Source of the DNA: Octopus sinensis
Taxonomy: Eukaryota
Length of the DNA: 10,585 nt
Direction of reading: 5' to 3'
Assembly: GCF_006345805.1 (NCBI RefSeq)
Contig: NW_021827372.1
Span: 1 to 10,585, forward strand
Numbering within the stretch: position 1 is the first letter of the stretch; the number at the start of each line of letters is the position of its first letter. The notes under the pieces are model-generated. The model searched no databases and was not told the DNA's origin. It saw only the letters and a program-made list of their open reading frames with translations. Both the position numbers and the translations under genes were made by a program. Positions 221 to 10,585 of this stretch are shown piece by piece.

Positions 221-473
221 GGCATGGCTGTATGGTTAAGAAACTCACTTCACAACCTTGTGGTCTCAGGTTCAGTCCCACTTTGCAGCACCTTAAAGAA
301 TTAACTTCTTCTAATGTTCCAGGTTGACTTAAGCCTTGTGAGCGGGTTTCGTACATGGAACTGATAAAGCCTATGGTATATACATGTGTGTGTATATTCA
401 TGTATGCATATCTATATTTGTACTTGTATGTGTATGCATGTATCTGTGTGTGTGTGTGTGAGTGTGTGTGTGT

Positions 474-511
<38 letters not shown>

Positions 512-3702: not shown

Positions 3703-4110
3703 AGGCGCAGGAGTGGCTGTGTGGTAATAGCTTGCTAACCAACCAACATGGTTCCGGGTTCAGTCCCACTGCGTGGCATCTTGGGCAGTATCTTCTGCTA
3801 TAAGCCCCGGGCCGACCAATGCCTTGTGTATTTGATTTGGTAGACGGAAATGAAAGAAGCCTGTCGTATATATGTATATATATAATATTTGTGTGTGTAT
3901 GTTTGTGTGTCTGTGTTTGTCTCTTAGCATTGCTTGACTCACCGATGCTGGTGTGTTTTACGTCCCCGTCACTTAGCGTTCGACAAAAGAGACCGATAGA
4001 ATAAGTACTGGCTTACAAAGAATAAGTCCCGGGTCGATTTGCTCGAACTAAAGGCGGTGCTCCGCATGGCCGATTCAATGACTAACAATTAAAAGAGTAA
4101 AGAGTAAGAG
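3703..4110 (+). mobile_element. Near full-length tRNA-derived SINE (Octopus-type) with (AGAGTA)n-like tail
   Basis: A-box TGGCTGTGTGGT, B-box GGTTCAGTCCC, central TA/TG tract, 3' body GAGACCGATAGAATAAGTACT...GGCGGTGCTCC, and tail AAAGAGTAAAGAGTAAGAG. It resembles Octopus tRNA-derived SINEs (OR1/OR2-type); exact family not determined. Confidence 0.85.
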
Positions 4111-4435: not shown

Positions 4436-4468
4436 GTTTTCCTTATATTCTTTGCAGATTCACTATGG
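4436..4468 (+). promoter_or_regulatory. Splice acceptor followed by a start codon in strong Kozak context
   Basis: TGTTTTCCTTATATTCTTTGCAG (AG at 4456-4457), then ATTCACT-ATG-G (ATG at 4465-4467; A at -3, G at +4). Confidence 0.7.
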
Positions 4469-5050
4469 AAGACCAGACTGAAAATACTTTAAGGAAACTT
4501 ATCCCTCAGAAATTGGCTTTGAGTACTCAACACCAAAACGGATGAAGGAGGAGTTGACAATAAAGGTGTAAATATGAGAGAGATGACGGTTCAAGGAGAG
4601 AATGTCCGAGAAACGATCTCCATCTCAGCCACAACAACAAAAAAAGACGTAAAGGAGACCCTAAAAACTGGAATAATTAGAAAACGAGATGTTTTCGACA
4701 AACACATATTTTATACAAGATTCAATGCCTATGAGGACAAAATGGATTTGCTGATAAATTCTCGGAAAGAAATATGTACTTTTTTAAAGGATAGGAATGG
4801 ATGAAAATACTTTTCTAAAACATTTTACACAGAAATAGAAATTCTGACGAAAACATTAAAAAAAAAAGATTACAATCAAGAATTTATAATTTTTGCAAAA
4901 CTAGAATTGTTCCTGGAACACTATATACAAAGAAATATTCTACAAGACAAACACAAAACCATTGAAGCACCAAAAATAATCACAAATTTCGGCCTCTTCA
5001 CAAGTTGTGATCAGAGAAGCAAACATTGAGGAATCTGGAGAAGAATTTGA
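4465..5050 (+). CDS. Fragmented N-terminal, probably helical/coiled-coil region (includes ORF 4574-4804)
   Basis: Frames 1, 3 and 2 join as MEDQTENTLRKLIPQ / EIGFEYSTPKRMKEELTIKV / MREMTVQ...FLKDRNG* / KYFSKTFYTEIEILTKTLKKKDYNQEFIIFAKLELFLEHYIQRNI. Rich in E/K/L/I. No Cys/His RING or B-box pattern is seen. Confidence 0.5.
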
Positions 5051-5520
5051 AGAAATCCCAAAATATCCAATATTGTCATCATAGAGGAGGGAGTGATGAC
5101 ATATTCCCACAATTGCAAGATAATAAGTTTAGTAACAAGAGACAGTGACAGAATTGATGTCCATTGTCCATCTTCTGTGACCAGTTTCACACAAGAATCA
5201 GTGAAGACATGGTTCTGGCAACCCTCCCCTTCCATGAAATGATTCTTATTATCAGCCCCAAAACCTTCAAGATCAAAAGGATACAGTTGGGGTTACATAT
5301 GGTGAGTTACTTGGAAGATTCTACACTTATAGGTGTAGAAATGTTTGGTAAGATAGTTTACCAATTTGATTGGGAGGATAATACCATTAACTATCAATTT
5401 ATTACCAAGAAACCCCTACAGATATTGCTGTAGGGGTCCAGAATATACTTGTAATTACATTCGCCAGCATCAACAGAGTAATCTGTTACAAACTGGATGG
5501 CCAACAGTTATGGGAGGTAG
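5051..5520 (+). CDS. Fragmented first beta-propeller module (blades 1-4)
   Basis: Frame 2 RNPKISNIVIIEEGVMTYSHNCKIISLVTRDSDRIDVHCPSSVTSFTQ, then frame 1 ISEDMVLATLPFHEMILIISPK..., then frame 3 PTDIAVGVQNILVITFASINRVICYKLDGQQLWEVET. Each junction is consistent with a 1-nt deletion. Confidence 0.6.
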
Positions 5521-7131
5521 AGACCCTCTTCTCTGCACCTCCCAAGTAAAATCTCTCTCTACCAAAATTATTTCTATGTCCTCCAGGGACAAATAATTTA
5601 TAGGATTTCAGCTAAAGGTGGTGTGACAAGGAGGGACATTGGCAGGAAATGCCGCTCTATTTCTGTTGGTAAAGATACCATTTTGGTAACAGATTATTGC
5701 GGCAAACCACATGGTATTCAAATGAATAAAGACTTTTGGCCCAAACTGTCATACAACCACCAGCTACATACCCCCAGTTTAAAAGACTATATTGATATTG
5801 AGGATTGCTACAACATTACAAATATTCTACCTATGTCTACATCTTCTATATTAATAATTTACAAAAACAAGAAAGCTAAATTATTCACTGATAACGGGGA
5901 AATAATTAACCAAAATAATTCAGTTTTCCTTGAGCTTCCTTCTTTCTGTTGTAGAATAAACGCAAACAGATTCCTGGTATTTTATCCTGAAATGAAAGGA
6001 TTTCAGTATATCACCTGTCCTGAACTAAAAAAAGGCCCTTTAATAAAGGTGCAAACTGGTTACATGAAAATATGTCATGTTGTATCAAATAAGTGTCTAG
6101 CTGTGACCACCACTGAAAACAAAATCGAGGTCCATATCCTCTTGATCAACGAAGATAAAGTTGACATTGCAGAAAGAATTTCTCTGGGACATCATAATGT
6201 CAGCATTGCTGCAACTCCAATTAATTTTGTAGTCGTAGATGGAAACGAAAATAAAATGGTATTTTATTCCACATGTGGTGAAGAACTTTTTCAAAAATAC
6301 CTTCCATTCTATGGCCACCCTCATCACATCTACTCTGATAATGTTTATTTCTATGTCCTCTTCAGGAGACACTCTATTCTCAGATGTTACGATATATATG
6401 GACAAATGAAATGGCAGTGGGAACTGCCTTTCCCTGTTCACCCTCACATTGCTGTTTTCCAAGGAACTCTTTATGTCCCGGACACTCAACTCAACAGGGT
6501 TCTTCTTTACAAGTATCAAGACCGGTCGTCTGGCGGTCTTTTACCCATTAAAAATCCTTACATCAGAAATCTAAATCTACGACTCAAAGAAAAGGAGAAT
6601 GACCAAAAACTTGTAATTGGCGAAATATGTAATCTGTCCAATGGACAGTTGGTGGTGTCTGACATCAACCATGATTGCTTGTTGTACATTTCTGAGGAAG
6701 GAGACATTGTGTCCAGATTATCTCTGCCGTCTACAGCCACAGATATATGTCGATGGGATTCTAATCATATAGGGGTCACATTACCCCTACAGAAACAATT
6801 AAGGGTCATCGGAAACCTATCAAAGACAGTGAGAAGTGTATCATTAAGGCAGCCTTATGTACAGGTGTGTAAGATGGGTGAATGTGAAATTGTTTGTTAT
6901 TGTGATAAACCATCACATTTAGACATTTTAGCCATCAATTATTATAATCAAGTTGAAGTAATTAAGACAATTAATATCCCTGTGTTTGTGAAATCATTAT
7001 CAGTAGACAAGGAAACAGAAAAGCTATTAATTGTTACTAGGGAAAAAGCTTTTCAGTACAACACTAGAATAGGTGGTGGTGGTCATCGTCGTCATCGTCT
7101 TCGTGTGGTAAAACTAGATAGGTTATGTTAG
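5521..7131 (+). CDS. Uninterrupted 536-aa segment: end of propeller 1, propeller 2 and truncated propeller 3
   Basis: The provided ORF 5623-7131 extends upstream in frame to 5521 (RPSSLHLPSKISLYQNYFYVLQGQIIYRISAKGG). It carries NHL-like blade motifs and ends at TAG 7129-7131. Confidence 0.8.
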   Translation, partial: RPSSLHLPSKISLYQNYFYVLQGQIIYRISAKGGVTRRDIGRKCRSISVGKDTILVTDYCGKPHGIQMNKDFWPKLSYNHQLHTPSLKDYIDIEDCYNITNILPMSTSSILIIYKNKKAKLFTDNGEIINQNNSVFLELPSFCCRINANRFLVFYPEMKGFQYITCPELKKGPLIKVQTGYMKICHVVSNKCLAVTTTENKIEVHILLINEDKVDIAERISLGHHNVSIAATPINFVVVDGNENKMVFYSTCGEELFQKYLPFYGHPHHIYSDNVYFYVLFRRHSILRCYDIYGQMKWQWELPFPVHPHIAVFQGTLYVPDTQLNRVLLYKYQDRSSGGLLPIKNPYIRNLNLRLKEKENDQKLVIGEICNLSNGQLVVSDINHDCLLYISEEGDIVSRLSLPSTATDICRWDSNHIGVTLPLQKQLRVIGNLSKTVRSVSLRQPYVQVCKMGECEIVCYCDKPSHLDILAINYYNQVEVIKTINIPVFVKSLSVDKETEKLLIVTREKAFQYNTRIGGGGHRRHRLRVVKLDRLC

Positions 7132-7137
7132 TATAAG

Positions 7138-8238
7138 ATGGTCCCCAGTGTTTTAATGTCCCAAGTGAAACGTCCCCTCAGTCTCCAAGGTGGATCTATT
7201 GACCAAACGTCTGTTTATCTGATAGACAGAAGCCGTATGTTTGCCATAAACGATCAGAATTTGTTGGTTAATGATCTCGTTACTAATAATCAACTTAATT
7301 ATTATATCGACCTGGTGGATGTATTTTCCAGACACATTTCTCTCAGTGAAATGTTGTCTTCCACTTTATATCTACAGGACCTGACAGTTTCTGATAAAGC
7401 CAGACATATTCCTCTCCCTAAACATTTGGGAGACAAAAGACCAGCGGAGATTAGATCTTTGGTTCTTACTGAAAATAATCTGATTGCAGGATGGGACAGG
7501 AAGAATGGAAACATTAAGATATTCACATTGGATGGTCACCTATTGGATTCAATCAAAGTGAATGTTTATAGAGATATTAAAATGTGTCGATGGCAGTCAA
7601 ACACACTGGTCATTACGAATAGGGATCGTTTTGATGATAATAAACGCCAACTGTTGACATTAAAAGTGGAATTTCCATTGTCGTTGGTAATTTACAAAAC
7701 GAGAAATAAATATGAATGTGTGGCTTCTTTATCAAACAATCAACTGGTTTTGAGTGAATGGAGAGATGCAAGACATTTGCATTTTGTTGATATTAATGAA
7801 ATACATTCGAGTGTGAAGGAAATAAAAAAAATAGACATACCTGAACCATTAATAAAGAGAGGCATAAATGGAGATTATTCTGATAAAATCCAGGATATTA
7901 AAGTTACTGATGAAGATGTCATCATTGTCTTAAACTGGAGATTCATCATTTTCTTCAACAGTGGTGGTCAATATTTACATTCAGTCAGACACTACATGGA
8001 GTATTATGTTGGTAGTGATGACAGGATGACAATTGATGACAGTTTTTTGTACATTCATGGTAAGTGGGAGAAATGTTTTGGTTCATTTGGATATCGAAAC
8101 ATTTTGTGTTTGACCCAGAATGGGGAATACAAGAGAATATTTTTAAATAAAAGAATTTATAAAGATAGAATAGATTTCTCCAGTATAGACTGTAAAGGAC
8201 CAAGGTTGTTGGAAGCCCCAGGTGGGGGAAAGGAATGA
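7138..8238 (+). CDS. 366-aa segment: linker plus propeller 4; same frame as 5521-7131
   Basis: Provided ORF. It contains blade motifs IRSLVLTENNLIAGWDRKNGNIKIFTLDG, MCRWQSNTLVIT, YECVASLSNNQLVLS and IQDIKVTDEDVIIVL. Confidence 0.8.
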   Translation: MVPSVLMSQVKRPLSLQGGSIDQTSVYLIDRSRMFAINDQNLLVNDLVTNNQLNYYIDLVDVFSRHISLSEMLSSTLYLQDLTVSDKARHIPLPKHLGDKRPAEIRSLVLTENNLIAGWDRKNGNIKIFTLDGHLLDSIKVNVYRDIKMCRWQSNTLVITNRDRFDDNKRQLLTLKVEFPLSLVIYKTRNKYECVASLSNNQLVLSEWRDARHLHFVDINEIHSSVKEIKKIDIPEPLIKRGINGDYSDKIQDIKVTDEDVIIVLNWRFIIFFNSGGQYLHSVRHYMEYYVGSDDRMTIDDSFLYIHGKWEKCFGSFGYRNILCLTQNGEYKRIFLNKRIYKDRIDFSSIDCKGPRLLEAPGGGKE

Positions 8239-8914
8239 ATTGTATGTTGAAGGGTTGTTTATGGTGAATCGAGACAGCTTCCCGGTTGCTCGTTTACAAA
8301 CAGACGAATGTCCTGTTCAAGTAAAAGATTTTGATGTCTCTGAGGAAGGAAAGACAGTTGTGTGTGAAAAAGCCAATAATGGAAATGTTAAAATATTCGA
8401 TGAAGACGGCCAGTTGCTATGTCACAGAAATGTTGCAAGTTTAGTTGGTGGTGTGTGTTTTACACAAGAATCACACATAATGGCCACGGTTCCTAAAAGG
8501 AAAGAAATATTTCAACTGAATGGAGAAGATTTGCAGACATCTCAAGTTTGGTCGAGTCTCATCCCTTATGGTGTAATATGGAGAAAAGTGGCGGGTATTT
8601 ACTGGTGTGTACATAATGAATTGATTGAATGTCATTGCATAAAGATTGATGGGGACCAAGTGAACATTCTGGAATCTGTGTCGTCATTAAATCTTGATTC
8701 TGGTCTTCGTTTCCCTTCCATTACATCTGAAACGAACAAGGAAATATTCAGTAATGAATTAATTAATAAATTGGAATACAGAGGAGGGGATGGAGATGGA
8801 GGAGGAAGAAGAAGAGGTAAATCAGGTGAAATAATTGGTAAAGGTAGATTAAAGGTGAGATGTGGTAATTACATAGCGGAGATTAATAATTCAGGAATTG
8901 ATGAATATCAGTGA
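8222..8914 (+). CDS. Segment encoding truncated propeller 5, joined to the previous ORF by a frameshift near a G run (8224-8228)
   Basis: Provided ORF. It contains VKDFDVSEEGKTVVCEKANNGNVKIFDEDGQLL and VGGVCFTQESHIMATVP. Confidence 0.75.
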   Translation: MGERNELYVEGLFMVNRDSFPVARLQTDECPVQVKDFDVSEEGKTVVCEKANNGNVKIFDEDGQLLCHRNVASLVGGVCFTQESHIMATVPKRKEIFQLNGEDLQTSQVWSSLIPYGVIWRKVAGIYWCVHNELIECHCIKIDGDQVNILESVSSLNLDSGLRFPSITSETNKEIFSNELINKLEYRGGDGDGGGRRRGKSGEIIGKGRLKVRCGNYIAEINNSGIDEYQ

Positions 8915-9983
8915 GGAGACTTCCATATAGGACAGCAATGGTCCCTTTTTCCATTCCTGCATTCGAGGAACCTGTTGATTATGATTATGGGACATTAGGG
9001 ACCGGAACAGTAAACTAATTAAGTTAGATGAGAATGTGAGTGTGTTGATGTTTCGAGAAAGTGTCACATTAATCAGAACAACAACAACAACAACAGTGGA
9101 CATACTTCAACATGAACAACAACAACAACGAACCCACTGGACATATGTCGGTGGACAGAGGAATGTTTCATTGTCGCCTTTGGGAGAGAAATGAGGGTCT
9201 TCAACAGGGATCTCCATCGTTTAAAAACCATCAGAACTGAGAAATACTACAACAGGATTTATAAATACAACGACAATCAACTCGTGTGTGGTGGTCATTA
9301 TATTAGAGACATAACTCAAGGAGAGAGACACAAGAAATACGTAAGAAAATGGATAAACAACAAGGATTGCTATTATTGCGATGACCCCGACATCTTTGAC
9401 CCTTATTATGTGGATGTGGTTGATTTTGAAGATGGGAAATGTAAAGATGAAGTGTGTCGTGGGAAGATGGGGAGAAAGGGAAGGTTGGAGGGAGAAGAAG
9501 GGGTGTTGGATGATGTGGGAGTCACATCTTTTGGTGATGTTGTTGTTTTGGGGAGGGAGATGGAATGATGGAGGGAGAGGAGTGGAGAGAGGGAGTTGGT
9601 GTGGAGGATCTGGATTTTGGGAAGTTTTTTGTTTTGTGGAATGGTTCAGGGAAAAGTCTTTGGTGAGGAGGATAAGAATAGAAGAAATATTTATTGATCC
9701 GGAAGATTATATTTCAAGACCTCGTCTGACCATAATTGGTGAATGTGTTTATATAACAGATACAATAAACAATATTTACGAAATACCTCGACAGATTGAA
9801 GAGGAAACATCTGAAGTTATTAAAGACCGGGGATTAAAAGATAATCCAAAATATTTACTCCTCAGAGGGGAGGATAATGAAGTCTCTGAAGTTCTTGGTT
9901 TGGATGTTTCAGACAATTCTTTGATGGTTTTTGGAATTATTCCTGGACCTCAATCTTTTGCTTTCTTTTATTTTGACAAATAA
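8905..9983 (+). CDS. Fragmented propeller 6 and C-terminus
   Basis: Frame 1 ISVRRLPYRTAMVPFSIPAFEEPVDYDYG, frame 3 DIRDRNSKLIKLDEN, frame 2 ECVDVSRKCHINQNNNNNNSGHTST*TTTTTNPLDICRWTEECFIVAFGREMRVFN...GREME, then frame 3 ...RPRLTIIGECVYITDTINNIYEIP...FAFFYFDK* (TAA at 9981-9983). Confidence 0.65.
9077..9129 (+). repeat. Two (AAC)n tracts inside the coding frame
   Basis: (AAC)6 at 9077-9094 and (AAC)5 at 9115-9129, read as poly-Asn and poly-Thr in frame 2. Confidence 0.9.
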
Positions 9984-10003
9984 ATATTTCCAGAAATATT
10001 AAA
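9979..10003 (+). terminator. Candidate polyadenylation signals
   Basis: AATAAA at 9979-9984 overlaps the stop codon; ATTAAA lies at 9998-10003. Weak evidence in AT-rich DNA. Confidence 0.35.
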
Positions 10004-10048
10004 CTTCAATCTTCTTCTTCTTCTTATTGTTGTTGTTGTTGTTGTAAA

Positions 10049-10101
10049 TGGCTTCGCCCGGGAATCGAACCTGCATCGCATACATTGCATTCTACACACT
10101 T
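10049..10101 (-). other. tRNA-like remnant (tRNA-Gly-like pseudogene or SINE head)
   Basis: The minus strand reads AGTGTGTAGAATGC...GCAGGTTCGATTCCCGGGCGAAGCCA, with a perfect B box GGTTCGATTCC. There is no intact anticodon arm and no 5' acceptor strand, so it is not a functional tRNA. Confidence 0.4.
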
Positions 10102-10131
10102 ATTGTTGTAACATTCCTCAACACTCTCTCT

Positions 10132-10262
10132 TTGTGTGTGTGTGTATATTTATATACAGTATATGTACATGCGTTTATATATATATACACACATATTTAG
10201 GAATGTATGTATAGAAATAAGGCTATAAGTATGTATGTTTGTGTGTGTGTATATACGCATGT

Positions 10263-10296
<34 letters not shown>

Positions 10297-10313
10297 ACGC
10301 ATGCATGTATGTA
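10132..10313. repeat. Compound TA/TG/TATG microsatellite region
   Basis: Directly visible dinucleotide and tetranucleotide tracts. Confidence 0.9.
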
Positions 10314-10374: not shown

Positions 10375-10585
10375 ACGACCACCGCCGCCGTCTCCGTCGT
10401 CGTCGTGGTCGTCGTCGTCGTCTCCGCCGTCGTCGTGGTCGTGGTCGTCGTCGTCGTGGTCGTCGTCGTCGTCTCCGCCGTCGTCGTCGTCGCCGTCGTG
10501 GTCGTCGTCGTCTCCGCCGTCGTCGTCGTCGTCGCCGCCGTCGTGGTCGTCGCGGTAGTCGTCTCCGCCGTCGTCGTCGTCTCCG
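10375..10585. repeat. GC/CpG-rich (GTC)n trinucleotide repeat with recurring GTG, TCC and GCC variants; runs off the window
   Basis: Units such as GTCGTCGTCGTCTCCGCC and GTCGTCGTG recur repeatedly. Confidence 0.95.

What the first reader, a model, noticed from the sequence alone, without database searches (positions are those of the whole stretch)
4465..9983. Giant intron-free gene encoding a chain of about six tandem NHL-like beta-propellers
Joined across lesions, the frame gives about 1,840 aa with six modules (about 5050-5720, 5800-6520, 6610-7070, 7450-8270, 8320-8900, 8980-9980). Each is built from ~40-aa blades in a shared order. Blade 2 carries a (D)IC/MC-RW-type motif (6742-6756, 7582-7593, 9140-9154). 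Blade 3 starts with Tyr (YMKICHV 6061, YVQVCKM 6856, YECVASL 7711, YGVIWRK 8567, YNRIYKY 9248). Short Pro-containing linkers separate modules. Molluscan TRIM-like proteins typically carry one C-terminal propeller, so six in tandem on one exon would be an unusual architecture. It could belong to a lineage-specific multivalent binding or immune-recognition family (inference).
Basis: partly seen in the sequence, partly recalled or inferred. Interest (0 to 1): 0.72.

Follow-up and report, generated by a model that had tools for sequence, protein, structure and literature searches.

The report
Dead copy of six-propeller octopus gene
The window holds a frame-broken (pseudogene) copy of an uncharacterised, octopus-lineage gene family. 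Its intact members encode about 1,800-residue single-exon proteins built from six NHL-type beta-propellers in a row, two of which evolve unusually fast.

Summary
Window 4465-9983 (+) is one long reading frame, broken by about 20 frame changes and one in-frame stop. Intact paralogous ORFs exist: 1,811 codons in O. sinensis and 1,802 in O. vulgaris.

Each module HMM scores the NHL domain of a cuttlefish TRIM-NHL protein above 2,000 shuffles. A module-4 profile's first 12 PDB hits are all TRIM-NHL domains (Brat, Thin, TRIM71, TRIM2/3). AlphaFold models are all-beta, and Foldseek matches only multi-propeller proteins. Pfam's own NHL model does not reach threshold, and no RING or B-box is present.

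The family occurs only in cephalopods. It has conserved single-copy members of about 1,670 aa in three Octopus species, copies in Argonauta, and a large expansion (at least 30 gene models) on one 29-Mb O. vulgaris chromosome. Modules 1, 2 and 5 are under purifying selection. Modules 4 and 6 show pN/pS above 1, with variable patches about one blade apart.

The most likely function is a cytosolic multivalent binder with fast-evolving recognition surfaces. This is inferred, not shown. The window copy itself is dead. The architecture is a new variant of a known fold and is not described in the searched literature.

The parts
4437..4457 (+). Polypyrimidine tract ending in CAG, 8 nt before the start codon. 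Putative 3' splice site of a 5'-UTR intron.
   Evidence: Read directly. Conserved in L001 and L003b, and mutated to CAT in the broken copy L002. The splice function is inferred and was not tested with transcripts.
4465..9983 (+). Whole frame-broken coding region: a pseudogene copy of the six-propeller family, from ATG 4465 to TAA 9981-9983.
   Evidence: Collinear with the intact ORFs L001:9512-14944 and L004:10001-15406.
4465..5051 (+). N-terminal region: a Lys/Arg-rich stretch followed by a helical domain, 'MEDQ / type A' cassette. It carries about 8 of the frame changes.
   Evidence: AF2 predicts helices at P0004 residues 64-146, pLDDT about 70. Window 4489-4954 does not align at DNA level to L001 9536-9853. 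dS for N is 0.6-0.8 between cassette types. No similarity to the TRIM coiled coil was detected.
5052..5730 (+). Propeller module 1 (about 226 aa), broken by frameshifts near 5062, 5188, 5407 and 5527.
   Evidence: AF2: all-beta, 21 strands, pLDDT 80-87. HMM scores the Sepia NHL domain at 11.4 bits against a best shuffle of 9.0. pN/pS 0.2-0.36.
5809..6531 (+). Propeller module 2 (about 241 aa), in frame in the window.
   Evidence: AF2: 23 strands, pLDDT 55-75. NHL score 11.7 bits against a best shuffle of 7.4. hhalign M1~M2 E 5.8e-4. Contains an NHL-like blade, 'IAVFQGTLYVPDTQLNRVLLYKY'.
6619..7080 (+). Propeller module 3 (154 aa, about 4 blades), with DICRW at 6742 and YVQVCKM at 6856.
   Evidence: HMM against the Sepia NHL domain: 1.8e-10, 30.1 bits. 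M3~M6 hhalign 95.5%, E 1.5e-8. AF2: 15 strands.
7081..7134 (+). Gly-rich low-complexity insert of variable length, with three indels and an in-frame TAG at 7129-7131.
   Evidence: It is 44 aa in O. sinensis and about 110 aa with an internal duplication in O. bimaculoides P0027.
7135..7449 (+). Conserved 'L34' segment (about 105-114 aa) of unresolved fold. It may supply the missing blades of propeller 3.
   Evidence: Present in all family members, including Argonauta. AF2 confidence is low. No NHL signal on its own. Joining it to M3 extends the NHL alignment to the whole domain without adding score.
7450..8269 (+). Propeller module 4 (about 274 aa), the most NHL-like module, with MCRW at 7582, YECVASL at 7711 and frameshifts at 8206 and 8223.
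   Evidence: HMM against the Sepia NHL domain: 1.3e-13 over nearly the whole domain, 41.2 bits. PDB profile hits: Brat 7.5e-6, Thin 1.3e-5, TRIM3, TRIM71, TRIM2. AF2 pLDDT about 80. pN/pS 1.1-3.0.
7627..8100 (+). Five hypervariable patches within module 4: 7627-7644, 7768-7773, 7858-7896, 8002-8022 and 8065-8100.
   Evidence: Column entropy across 59 family sequences, mapped to the window. Patch centres are spaced about 23-45 aa apart (45, 35, 45 and 23 aa), roughly one patch per blade.
8321..8902 (+). Propeller module 5 (about 194 aa), highly conserved among copies, with YGVIWRK at 8567.
   Evidence: HMM against the Sepia NHL domain: 4.3e-9, 25.9 bits. M4~M5 hhalign E 8.7e-5. dN 0.002-0.03 among close copies. 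AF2 did not model it (pLDDT about 26).
8980..9980 (+). Propeller module 6 (about 318 aa, long beta hairpins), with DICRW at 9140 and YNRIYKY at 9248. Frameshifts lie at 8989, 9132 and 9565 (a 40-bp insertion).
   Evidence: AF2 pLDDT 80-93, about 25 strands. NHL score 13.3 bits against a best shuffle of 7.2. pN/pS 1.7-3.8, P 0.002-0.014 in three of the four pairs tested and 0.12 in the fourth.
9476..9725 (+). Three hypervariable patches within module 6: 9476-9499, 9554-9638 and 9672-9725.
   Evidence: The 22-nt x2 tandem repeat at 9551-9595 coincides with the 40-bp frame-shifting insertion.

Best explanation
**What it is (shown)**
- Window 4465-9983 (+) is a pseudogenised copy of a cephalopod-restricted gene family.
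- Intact members encode about 1,660-1,925-aa proteins from one uninterrupted coding exon.
- The domain order is: a short basic stretch, a helical N-terminal domain, then six consecutive beta-propeller modules.
- Each module descends from the NHL propeller of TRIM-NHL proteins. There is no RING, B-box, signal peptide or membrane segment.
- The family has old, conserved single-copy members and a young expansion made by segmental duplication, concentrated on one small chromosome. Gene conversion or cassette exchange makes the copies mosaic. The window belongs to this expansion.

**How it most likely works (inferred)**
- The protein is a cytosolic multivalent binder.
- The conserved propellers (1, 2, 3, 5) probably provide a constant scaffold or fixed partners.
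- Propellers 4 and 6 carry periodically spaced hypervariable loops under diversifying selection. They would recognise fast-changing ligands, RNA or protein, for example from viruses or mobile elements. TRIM-NHL and TRIM56 NHL surfaces bind RNA or protein in this way.

**Confidence by step**
- Identity and architecture: about 0.85.
- The window copy is non-functional: about 0.85.
- Recognition or immune-type function: about 0.35.
For: **Broken frame and intact relatives**
- Broken frame.
- Intact ORFs: 1,811 codons (L001, O. sinensis) and 1,802 codons (L004, O. vulgaris). L003b and L005a have one frameshift each.

**Module homology**
- In-register cross-hits.
- hhalign: M3~M6 1.5e-8, M4~M5 8.7e-5, M1~M2 5.8e-4. 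Controls are 0.024 or worse.

**NHL origin**
- The family profile hits the Sepia RING/B-box/NHL protein P0079 at E 5e-7 in a library of 1.84e9 proteins.
- All six module HMMs beat 2,000 shuffles of that NHL domain. The N domain and L34 do not.
- The M4 profile's first 12 PDB matches are all TRIM-NHL NHL domains.

**Fold**
- AF2 gives all-beta modules of short strands. Foldseek matches only multi-propeller proteins (IFT-A, LRP4/LRP2, DDB1, UTPs), E 1e-20 to 1e-10.

**Distribution and conservation**
- Cephalopods only.
- The same N-M1-M2-M3-L34-M4-M5-M6 order holds in deep paralogs and in Argonauta.
- Orthologs are 91-99% identical across Octopus species, while deep paralogs share only 30%.

**Selection**
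- pN/pS is 0.2-0.4 in M1 and M2, 1.1-3.0 in M4 and 1.7-3.8 in M6.
- Fisher test, M4+M6 against M1+M2+M5: P of 4e-5 or lower.
- Hypervariable patches lie roughly one blade apart, 23-45 aa.

**Other**
- No signal peptide or TM segment: maximum 19-residue Kyte-Doolittle hydropathy is 1.52, within a beta strand.
- Segmental duplication: at least 4 kb of upstream flank is shared among paralog loci.
Against: - Pfam's NHL HMM does not hit the window, L001 or L004 at any listed E-value. Across the family only 2 of 38 members reach E 0.049.
- Plain BLASTP finds no internal repeat.
- Several module-to-module hhalign probabilities are low, below 30%.
- AF2 confidence is moderate overall (mean pLDDT 58-60). 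Module 5 and L34 are not modelled.
- I could not inspect coordinates, so ring closure and exact blade numbers are unverified.
- Foldseek's best hits are as often WD40 as six-bladed YWTD proteins.
- pN/pS above 1 comes from non-independent pairwise counts. Gene conversion or misalignment in indel-rich patches could inflate it.
- There are no expression, ligand or localisation data.
- The frame breaks could in principle be assembly errors, because the source assembly is unknown.
Confidence: 0.7

Rival explanations
1. The repeated unit is a mobile element and the ORF is a transposon-encoded protein, not a host gene family.
For: - There are many dispersed copies, many of them degraded.
- The coding sequence is intronless.
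- Small dispersed repeats are embedded around the copies.
Against: - No reverse transcriptase, integrase, transposase or capsid domain appears in any member.
- Copies share at least 4 kb of upstream flank rather than sharp ends.
- Conserved single-copy orthologs on other chromosomes are 91-99% identical across three Octopus species.
- Modules 1, 2 and 5 are under purifying selection.
- The modules derive from a host TRIM-NHL domain.
Confidence: 0.04
2. The modules are WD40-type (or another non-NHL) propellers, and the NHL resemblance is convergence of beta-strand patterns.
For: - Foldseek's top hits include many WD40 tandem-propeller proteins: IFT-A, DDB1, UTPs, EML.
- The most frequent sub-threshold Pfam hit is a WDR90 propeller, in 15 of 38 members.
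- Two bacterial nSTAND-WD40 proteins appear at E about 3e-4.
Against: - Sequence-profile evidence points specifically to NHL. P0079's NHL region is hit at E 5e-7 library-wide.
- All six modules score above 2,000 shuffles.
- The first 12 PDB sequence matches are all TRIM-NHL domains, and the first WD40 protein (RACK1) appears only at E 0.45.
- The Pfam WD40 repeat model itself is absent from the family's hit lists. Only specialised WD40-type propeller models appear, all far below their cut-offs.
- The blade order is collinear with the Sepia NHL domain.
Confidence: 0.08
3. The window copy is a working gene, and the apparent lesions are assembly or sequencing errors.
For: - Most lesions are 1-2-bp indels.
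- Long error-free stretches remain (5530-7100, 7136-8205).
- The source assembly is unknown.
- The nearest copies are intact or nearly so.
Against: - There are about 20 frame changes, including 7-, 13-, 40- and 91-bp indels, and many are not in homopolymer runs.
- Other copies from a high-quality O. vulgaris assembly are broken in different places (L002, L003a), so pseudogenes are common in this family.
- No gene product matching the window is on record.
Confidence: 0.08
4. The family has a housekeeping structural or scaffolding role, for example cytoskeletal or ciliary like other multi-propeller proteins. The high pN/pS in the expanded clade reflects relaxed constraint on redundant duplicates, not adaptive recognition.
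For: - The deep single-copy members are strongly conserved.
- The closest structural analogues are scaffolds: IFT-A, DDB1, EML.
- Many expanded copies are decaying.
- pN/pS values near 1 in M3 and M4 fit relaxation.
Against: - M6 pN/pS of 2.5-3.8 exceeds 1 with P 0.002-0.014 in three of four pairs, including the pair of intact copies.
- In the same genes M1, M2 and M5 stay at 0.2-0.5, which general relaxation would not produce.
- Variable patches are focal and lie roughly one blade apart.
Confidence: 0.25

Closest known systems
TRIM-NHL proteins (Brat, TRIM71/LIN-41, TRIM2, TRIM3, TRIM32/Thin; cephalopod example P0079 from Acanthosepion pharaonis)
   Same: - The propeller modules are homologous to their NHL domain.
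- They share blade-level motifs: a G-I-C-x-W type strand in blade 2 and Tyr at the start of blade 3.
- Both are cytosolic, with no signal peptide.
   Different: - No RING, B-box or filamin domain.
- Six propellers instead of one.
- An unrelated helical N-terminal domain.
- About 1,800 aa from a single coding exon.
- No E3 ligase module, so it cannot act as a ubiquitin ligase on its own.
TRIM5alpha / fish finTRIM, rapidly evolving TRIM restriction factors (established knowledge), and TRIM56, whose NHL-like C-terminus binds RNA and restricts Zika virus (PMC6623546, abstract as listed)
   Same: - Lineage-specific expansion with many pseudogenes.
- Focal diversifying selection in loops of the C-terminal ligand-binding domain.
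- Intracellular location.
   Different: - TRIM5alpha and finTRIMs use a B30.2/SPRY domain and keep the RING.
- Here the variable surfaces are on NHL propellers 4 and 6 of a six-propeller chain.
- An antiviral role is untested.
Multi-propeller receptors and scaffolds (LRP4/LRP2 YWTD propellers; DDB1; IFT-A subunits)
   Same: Several beta-propellers on one chain. These are the best Foldseek matches, E 1e-20 to 1e-10.
   Different: - LRP propellers are extracellular and separated by EGF modules.
- DDB1 and IFT-A use 7-bladed WD40 propellers.
- There is no sequence-level relationship, and TM-scores are low (0.13-0.24) because domain arrangements differ.

Membership tests
NHL-repeat beta-propeller (Pfam PF01436, six-bladed TolB-like clan) | Significant profile similarity to bona fide NHL domains | tested here: met
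   - The family profile hits P0079's NHL region at E 5e-7 in 1.84e9 proteins. P0079 carries Pfam NHL at 29.1 bits, above the 20-bit cut-off.
- Module HMM scores are M4 41.2, M3 30.1, M5 25.9, M6 13.3, M2 11.7 and M1 11.4 bits. The best of 2,000 shuffles is 9.1 or lower.
- PDB hits: Brat, Thin, TRIM3, TRIM71, TRIM2.
NHL-repeat beta-propeller (Pfam PF01436, six-bladed TolB-like clan) | Pfam NHL repeat model matches the protein itself at or above its gathering score | tested here: not met
   - No NHL hit for window pieces, L001 or L004, even at E up to 10.
- Only 2 of 38 family members reach E 0.049.
- The best is deep paralog P0067 at 18.5 bits against a cut-off of 20.
NHL-repeat beta-propeller (Pfam PF01436, six-bladed TolB-like clan) | Fold: six four-stranded antiparallel blades of about 40-45 aa closed into a ring | tested here: inconclusive
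   - AF2 gives all-beta modules with about 21, 23, 15(+5), 22 and 25 short strands.
- Foldseek matches only propeller proteins.
- Strand counts suggest 5-6 blades.
- Coordinates could not be inspected, and module 5 was not modelled.
TRIM-NHL (class VII tripartite-motif proteins) | N-terminal RING finger and B-box zinc fingers | tested here: not met
   Pfam finds none in window pieces, 38 family members, the two intact ORFs or the deep paralogs. The control P0079 shows both.
TRIM-NHL (class VII tripartite-motif proteins) | Coiled-coil dimerisation region before the C-terminal domain | tested here: inconclusive
   A helical N-terminal domain is predicted. It shows no detectable similarity to P0079 residues 1-400 (hhalign E 0.36).
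TRIM-NHL (class VII tripartite-motif proteins) | A single C-terminal NHL propeller | tested here: not met
   There are six collinear NHL-derived modules.
WD40-repeat multi-propeller proteins | WD40 repeat or WD40-propeller HMM matches above threshold | tested here: not met
   Only sub-threshold hits: the WDR90 propeller at best E 1.4e-4, with the listed scores 11-15 bits against a 50-bit cut-off. There is no WD40 (PF00400) hit.
Transposable-element protein | Recognisable mobilisation domain (RT, integrase, transposase), and sharp unit ends with terminal repeats | tested here: not met
   No such domains. Homology among loci extends at least 4 kb upstream with variable limits. Terminal repeats were not searched exhaustively.
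Pseudogene (status of the window copy) | Multiple frame-disrupting lesions relative to intact relatives | tested here: met
   About 20 frame changes and an in-frame TAG at 7129-7131, against the intact ORFs of L001 and L004.

The most novel reading that the evidence does not exclude
Octopods have evolved a RING-less, six-propeller derivative of TRIM-NHL proteins into a germline-diversified intracellular recognition family.

- Conserved propellers would form a constant scaffold.
- Propellers 4 and 6 would present hypervariable loops, one per blade, as ligand-binding surfaces.
- Diversity would come from segmental duplication, cassette exchange and gene conversion within a cluster on one small chromosome.

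This would be functionally analogous to TRIM5/finTRIM or NLR-type arms-race receptors, but built on NHL propellers.
Probability: 0.25. Interest if true: 0.8.

Novelty: new variant of a known kind. Interest (0 to 1): 0.55.

Why it matters
- Cephalopod genomes are known for a few large lineage-specific expansions (protocadherins, C2H2 zinc fingers, GPCRs). This is a further, apparently undescribed one.
- All public names for it are 'uncharacterized' or 'hypothetical', and six locus and protein identifiers returned no paper.
- It shows how a common single-propeller module (TRIM-NHL) was multiplied into a six-propeller chain that has been stable since before the Octopus-Argonauta split.
- Module-specific diversifying selection points to a testable candidate for invertebrate intracellular recognition or immunity.
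- Public gene models for this family are systematically truncated or chimeric. Examples are 859 aa annotated for an intact 1,811-codon ORF, and one model spanning two copies. The family is therefore invisible to domain-based surveys and needs re-annotation.

Tried and rejected
- **BLASTP self-comparison** of the intact 1,811-aa protein found no internal repeat at E up to 10. Profile methods were needed.
- **Pfam** on window pieces, intact ORFs and 38 family members gave nothing above threshold.
- **L34 segment (7135-7449).** Tests against NHL and against the C-terminal halves of the other modules gave no signal. Joining it to module 3 lengthens the NHL alignment but adds no score, so its fold stays open.
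- **N-terminal domain** against the RING/B-box/coiled-coil part of P0079: no similarity.
- **Orthology with L001.** I first read L001 as the strict ortholog because the flanks are collinear. I dropped this after finding that the same 4-kb upstream flank is shared by other paralog loci, and that true O. vulgaris-O. sinensis orthologs in this family are 99.5% identical.
- **Source organism.** An exact look-up of a window ORF found nothing on record.
- **P0079 relatives.** The search returned only three distant TRIM-NHL proteins, so the donor TRIM-NHL lineage is not pinned down.
- **RNA features.** Rfam and tRNA scans of the window were negative.
- **Literature.** Searches for the family, its accessions, or NHL in cephalopods found nothing relevant.
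- **Lost job.** The first profile-search job was lost on the server and re-run.

Full report
**1. What is in the window**

The window is AT-rich eukaryotic DNA with microsatellites. On the + strand, a coding frame runs from an ATG at 4465 to a TAA at 9981-9983. It can be followed only by changing frame repeatedly.
- The long stop-free pieces are 5521-7128 (536 codons), 7132-8235 (368), 8189-8911 (241), 9116-9565 and 9357-9980.
- Protein-guided ungapped matches show 11 frame changes between 4465 and 5530.
- Nucleotide alignment to an intact relative lists further frame-shifting indels:
  - in the Gly-rich stretch at 7104-7134, which also holds an in-frame TAG at 7129-7131;
  - at 8206, 8223, 8904, 8989 and 9132;
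  - a 40-bp insertion at 9565.

**2. It is a dead copy of a real gene family**

Two protein searches returned only Octopus proteins (O. vulgaris, O. sinensis, O. bimaculoides). All are annotated as uncharacterised, and none has a Pfam domain.
- The fetched paralogous loci show uninterrupted ORFs of 1,811 codons (L001, O. sinensis) and 1,802 codons (L004, O. vulgaris).
- Two more copies have one frameshift each. Others are heavily broken.
- The public gene models are truncated or chimeric versions of these ORFs. For example, P0001 is 859 aa for the 1,811-codon ORF, and the P0021 model spans 29 kb across two copies.
- The coding sequence sits on one exon. A conserved polypyrimidine-CAG 8 nt upstream of the ATG suggests a spliced 5' UTR. 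This is an inference.
- The window copy, with about 20 lesions, is a pseudogene. Assembly error cannot be formally excluded, because the source assembly is unknown and no product of the window is on record.

**3. The six modules are real and mutually related**

Plain BLASTP sees no repeat. Profiles built from a 59-sequence family alignment do see one.
- hhalign gives M3~M6 at 95.5% (E 1.5e-8), M4~M5 at E 8.7e-5, M1~M2 and M1~M3 at about 6e-4, and M2~M4 at 1.4e-3. Comparisons with the N-terminal domain or the L34 segment stay at E 0.024 or worse.
- Module HMMs hit the other modules in register on the intact protein.
- They hit more strongly on deep paralogs. For example, the M3 model finds M1, M2, M4 and M6 of P0062 at E from 1e-10 to 8e-4, and M2, M4 and M5 of P0067 at 5e-7 to 6e-5.

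**4. The modules are NHL-type propellers**

- A profile of the C-terminal half (918 positions) was searched against 1.84 billion representative proteins. It found only 30 proteins at E of 1e-3 or better.
- One is P0079 from the cuttlefish Acanthosepion pharaonis (E 5e-7). Pfam shows it to be a RING + B-box + NHL protein.
- Every module HMM matches its NHL domain collinearly: M4 1.3e-13 across almost the whole domain, M3 1.8e-10, M5 4.3e-9, M6 2.5e-5, M2 1.2e-4, M1 9e-4.
- All six score above every one of 2,000 shuffled versions. The N domain and L34 do not.
- A module-4 profile searched against all PDB sequences lists, as its first 12 hits, only NHL domains of TRIM-NHL proteins: Brat 7.5e-6, Thin 1.3e-5, TRIM3, TRIM71, TRIM2.
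- AlphaFold2 models of two family proteins (P0004, N-terminal half; P0023, C-terminal half) give:
  - a helical N-terminal domain followed by all-beta modules;
  - pLDDT 80-87 for M1, about 80 for M4, 80-93 for M6, and 55-75 for M2 and M3;
  - no usable model for M5 or L34.
- Foldseek against the PDB returns only multi-propeller proteins at probability 1.0: IFT-A, LRP4/LRP2, DDB1, UTPs, EML.
- Against full membership:
  - Pfam's 28-residue NHL model does not reach threshold in this subfamily.
  - No RING or B-box exists.
  - Blade numbers (5-6, from strand counts) and ring closure could not be checked on coordinates.

**5. Distribution and history**

- Besides the expanded clade, there are conserved single-copy members.
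  - P0064/P0082/P0083 (1,674-1,680 aa) and P0067/P0085/P0086 (full-length members 1,662-1,674 aa; the O. sinensis model P0085 is 1,118 aa) occur in all three Octopus species.
  - P0062 (1,712 aa) occurs in O. bimaculoides, and two proteins of 1,913 and 1,925 aa in Argonauta hians.
- All have the same order, N-M1-M2-M3-L34-M4-M5-M6.
- Orthologs are 91-99.5% identical, while P0064 and P0067 share only 29.5% over their full length. The six-propeller architecture is therefore old within octopods.
- The expansion is concentrated on one O. vulgaris chromosome of 29.19 Mb (OX597841.1). At least 30 gene models lie there, at scattered positions (6.45, 9.72, 21.98 and 25.13 Mb in the loci fetched). A 15.1-Mb O. 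sinensis scaffold holds a similar concentration.
- Copies share at least 4 kb of upstream flank. Duplication was therefore segmental, not transposition of a sharp-ended element.
- Divergence is mosaic. Between the two intact copies, dS is 0.59-0.88 in the N domain and M1 but 0.01-0.07 in M2-M6. The window's N-terminal cassette (4489-4954) does not align to L001 at DNA level, although both sides do. This indicates gene conversion or cassette exchange.

**6. Selection**

Nei-Gojobori counts per module give:
- pN/pS of 0.2-0.4 for M1 and 0.2-0.7 for M2;
- very low divergence in M5;
- 1.1-3.0 for M4 and 1.7-3.8 for M6.

M6 shows a significant excess of non-synonymous change in three of the four pairs tested, including the pair of intact copies (P 0.014). 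The other two values are 0.011 and 0.002, and the fourth pair gives 0.12. The contrast of M4+M6 against M1+M2+M5 is strong (Fisher P from 5e-9 to 4e-5).

Hypervariable alignment patches fall in M4 at spacings of about 23-45 aa, roughly one per blade, and in three patches of M6. They map to window 7627-8100 and 9476-9725.

Caveats: the pairs are not independent, and recombination or misalignment in indel-rich patches could inflate dN.

**7. How it most likely works**

The proteins have no signal peptide or membrane segment, so they are probably intracellular.
- By homology, NHL propellers bind RNA or proteins on one face. This is established knowledge for Brat, TRIM71 and TRIM32. TRIM56's RNA-binding, antiviral NHL-like region is cited from PMC6623546 as listed.
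- The pattern of conserved and diversifying propellers suggests a multivalent binder. Propellers 4 and 6 would recognise fast-evolving ligands, and the others would provide a constant scaffold or partners.
- Without a RING, it cannot ubiquitinate on its own.
- This mechanism is an inference (about 0.35). The main alternative is a structural scaffold with relaxed constraint in redundant duplicates (about 0.25).

**8. Novelty**

- No paper in the searchable library mentions these loci or an NHL expansion in cephalopods.
- The fold and its parent family are known. The RING-less chain of six contiguous NHL propellers on one exon, its octopod restriction and its module-specific diversification are not described.
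- I therefore rate it a new variant of a known kind.
- The window itself contributes only a decayed copy.

Noticed in passing
window 3704-4108: A dispersed repeat of about 405 bp is inserted in the co-duplicated upstream flank. It is absent at the same point in L001 and L003 (there, 3704 joins directly to 4109). Other copies lie in L001 24108-25229, L003 and L005. It is probably a SINE-like element.
   Followed up: partly
window ~10043-10095 (minus strand): The reverse complement reads like the 3' half of a tRNA, with a T-arm and an acceptor ending in CCA (GGTTCGATTCCCGGGCGAAGCCA). This suggests a tRNA-derived SINE or tRNA relic in the 3' flank. The same stretch is conserved in paralog loci. 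ARAGORN and Rfam find nothing.
   Followed up: partly
window 4465-5530 versus 5530-7100 and 7136-8205: Lesion density is very uneven: 11 frame changes in the first 1.07 kb, and none in the next 1.57 kb or in 7136-8205. dS is also mosaic. Together these suggest that parts of this pseudogene were recently overwritten by gene conversion from intact copies.
   Followed up: partly
window 4489-4954; L001 9536-9853; L004/L005 10001-10450: The N-terminal ~150 aa comes in at least two or three cassette types: a MEDQ type with 'IFYTRFNAYEDK', a MEDQ type with 'DLEWFQQRLFDIYVT', and a MEKINEE type. They do not align at DNA level, although the flanking sequence does.
   Followed up: partly
window 7081-7134 (and L001 ~11985-12143): The Gly/Ser-rich low-complexity insert after module 3 varies widely in length between copies and species. 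It is about 18 codons here, 44 aa in O. sinensis, and about 110 aa with an internal duplication in O. bimaculoides P0027.
   Followed up: no
window 9551-9595: A 22-nt unit repeated twice coincides with the 40-bp frame-shifting insertion inside a hypervariable patch of module 6. Local duplication appears to be one source of variation there.
   Followed up: no
window 445-508, 10262-10297, 10395-10581: Microsatellites (TG)32, (TA)18 and (CGT)62. The last one creates long spurious ORFs in several frames at the window's end.
   Followed up: no
L001, L003, L004 (public annotations P0001, P0021, P0022, P0015/16, P0057): Public gene models of this family are systematically wrong:
- intact 1,800-codon ORFs are annotated as 859-1,596 aa with artificial introns;
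- one model joins two copies across 29 kb;
- others are fused to C2H2 zinc fingers or to an ankyrin + RING-like gene.
   Followed up: partly
L005 15604-21804: Between two convergent family copies in L005, the last ~80 codons plus 3' flank (window 9743-10300) are repeated four times in both orientations. This is a local 3'-end fragment array.
   Followed up: no
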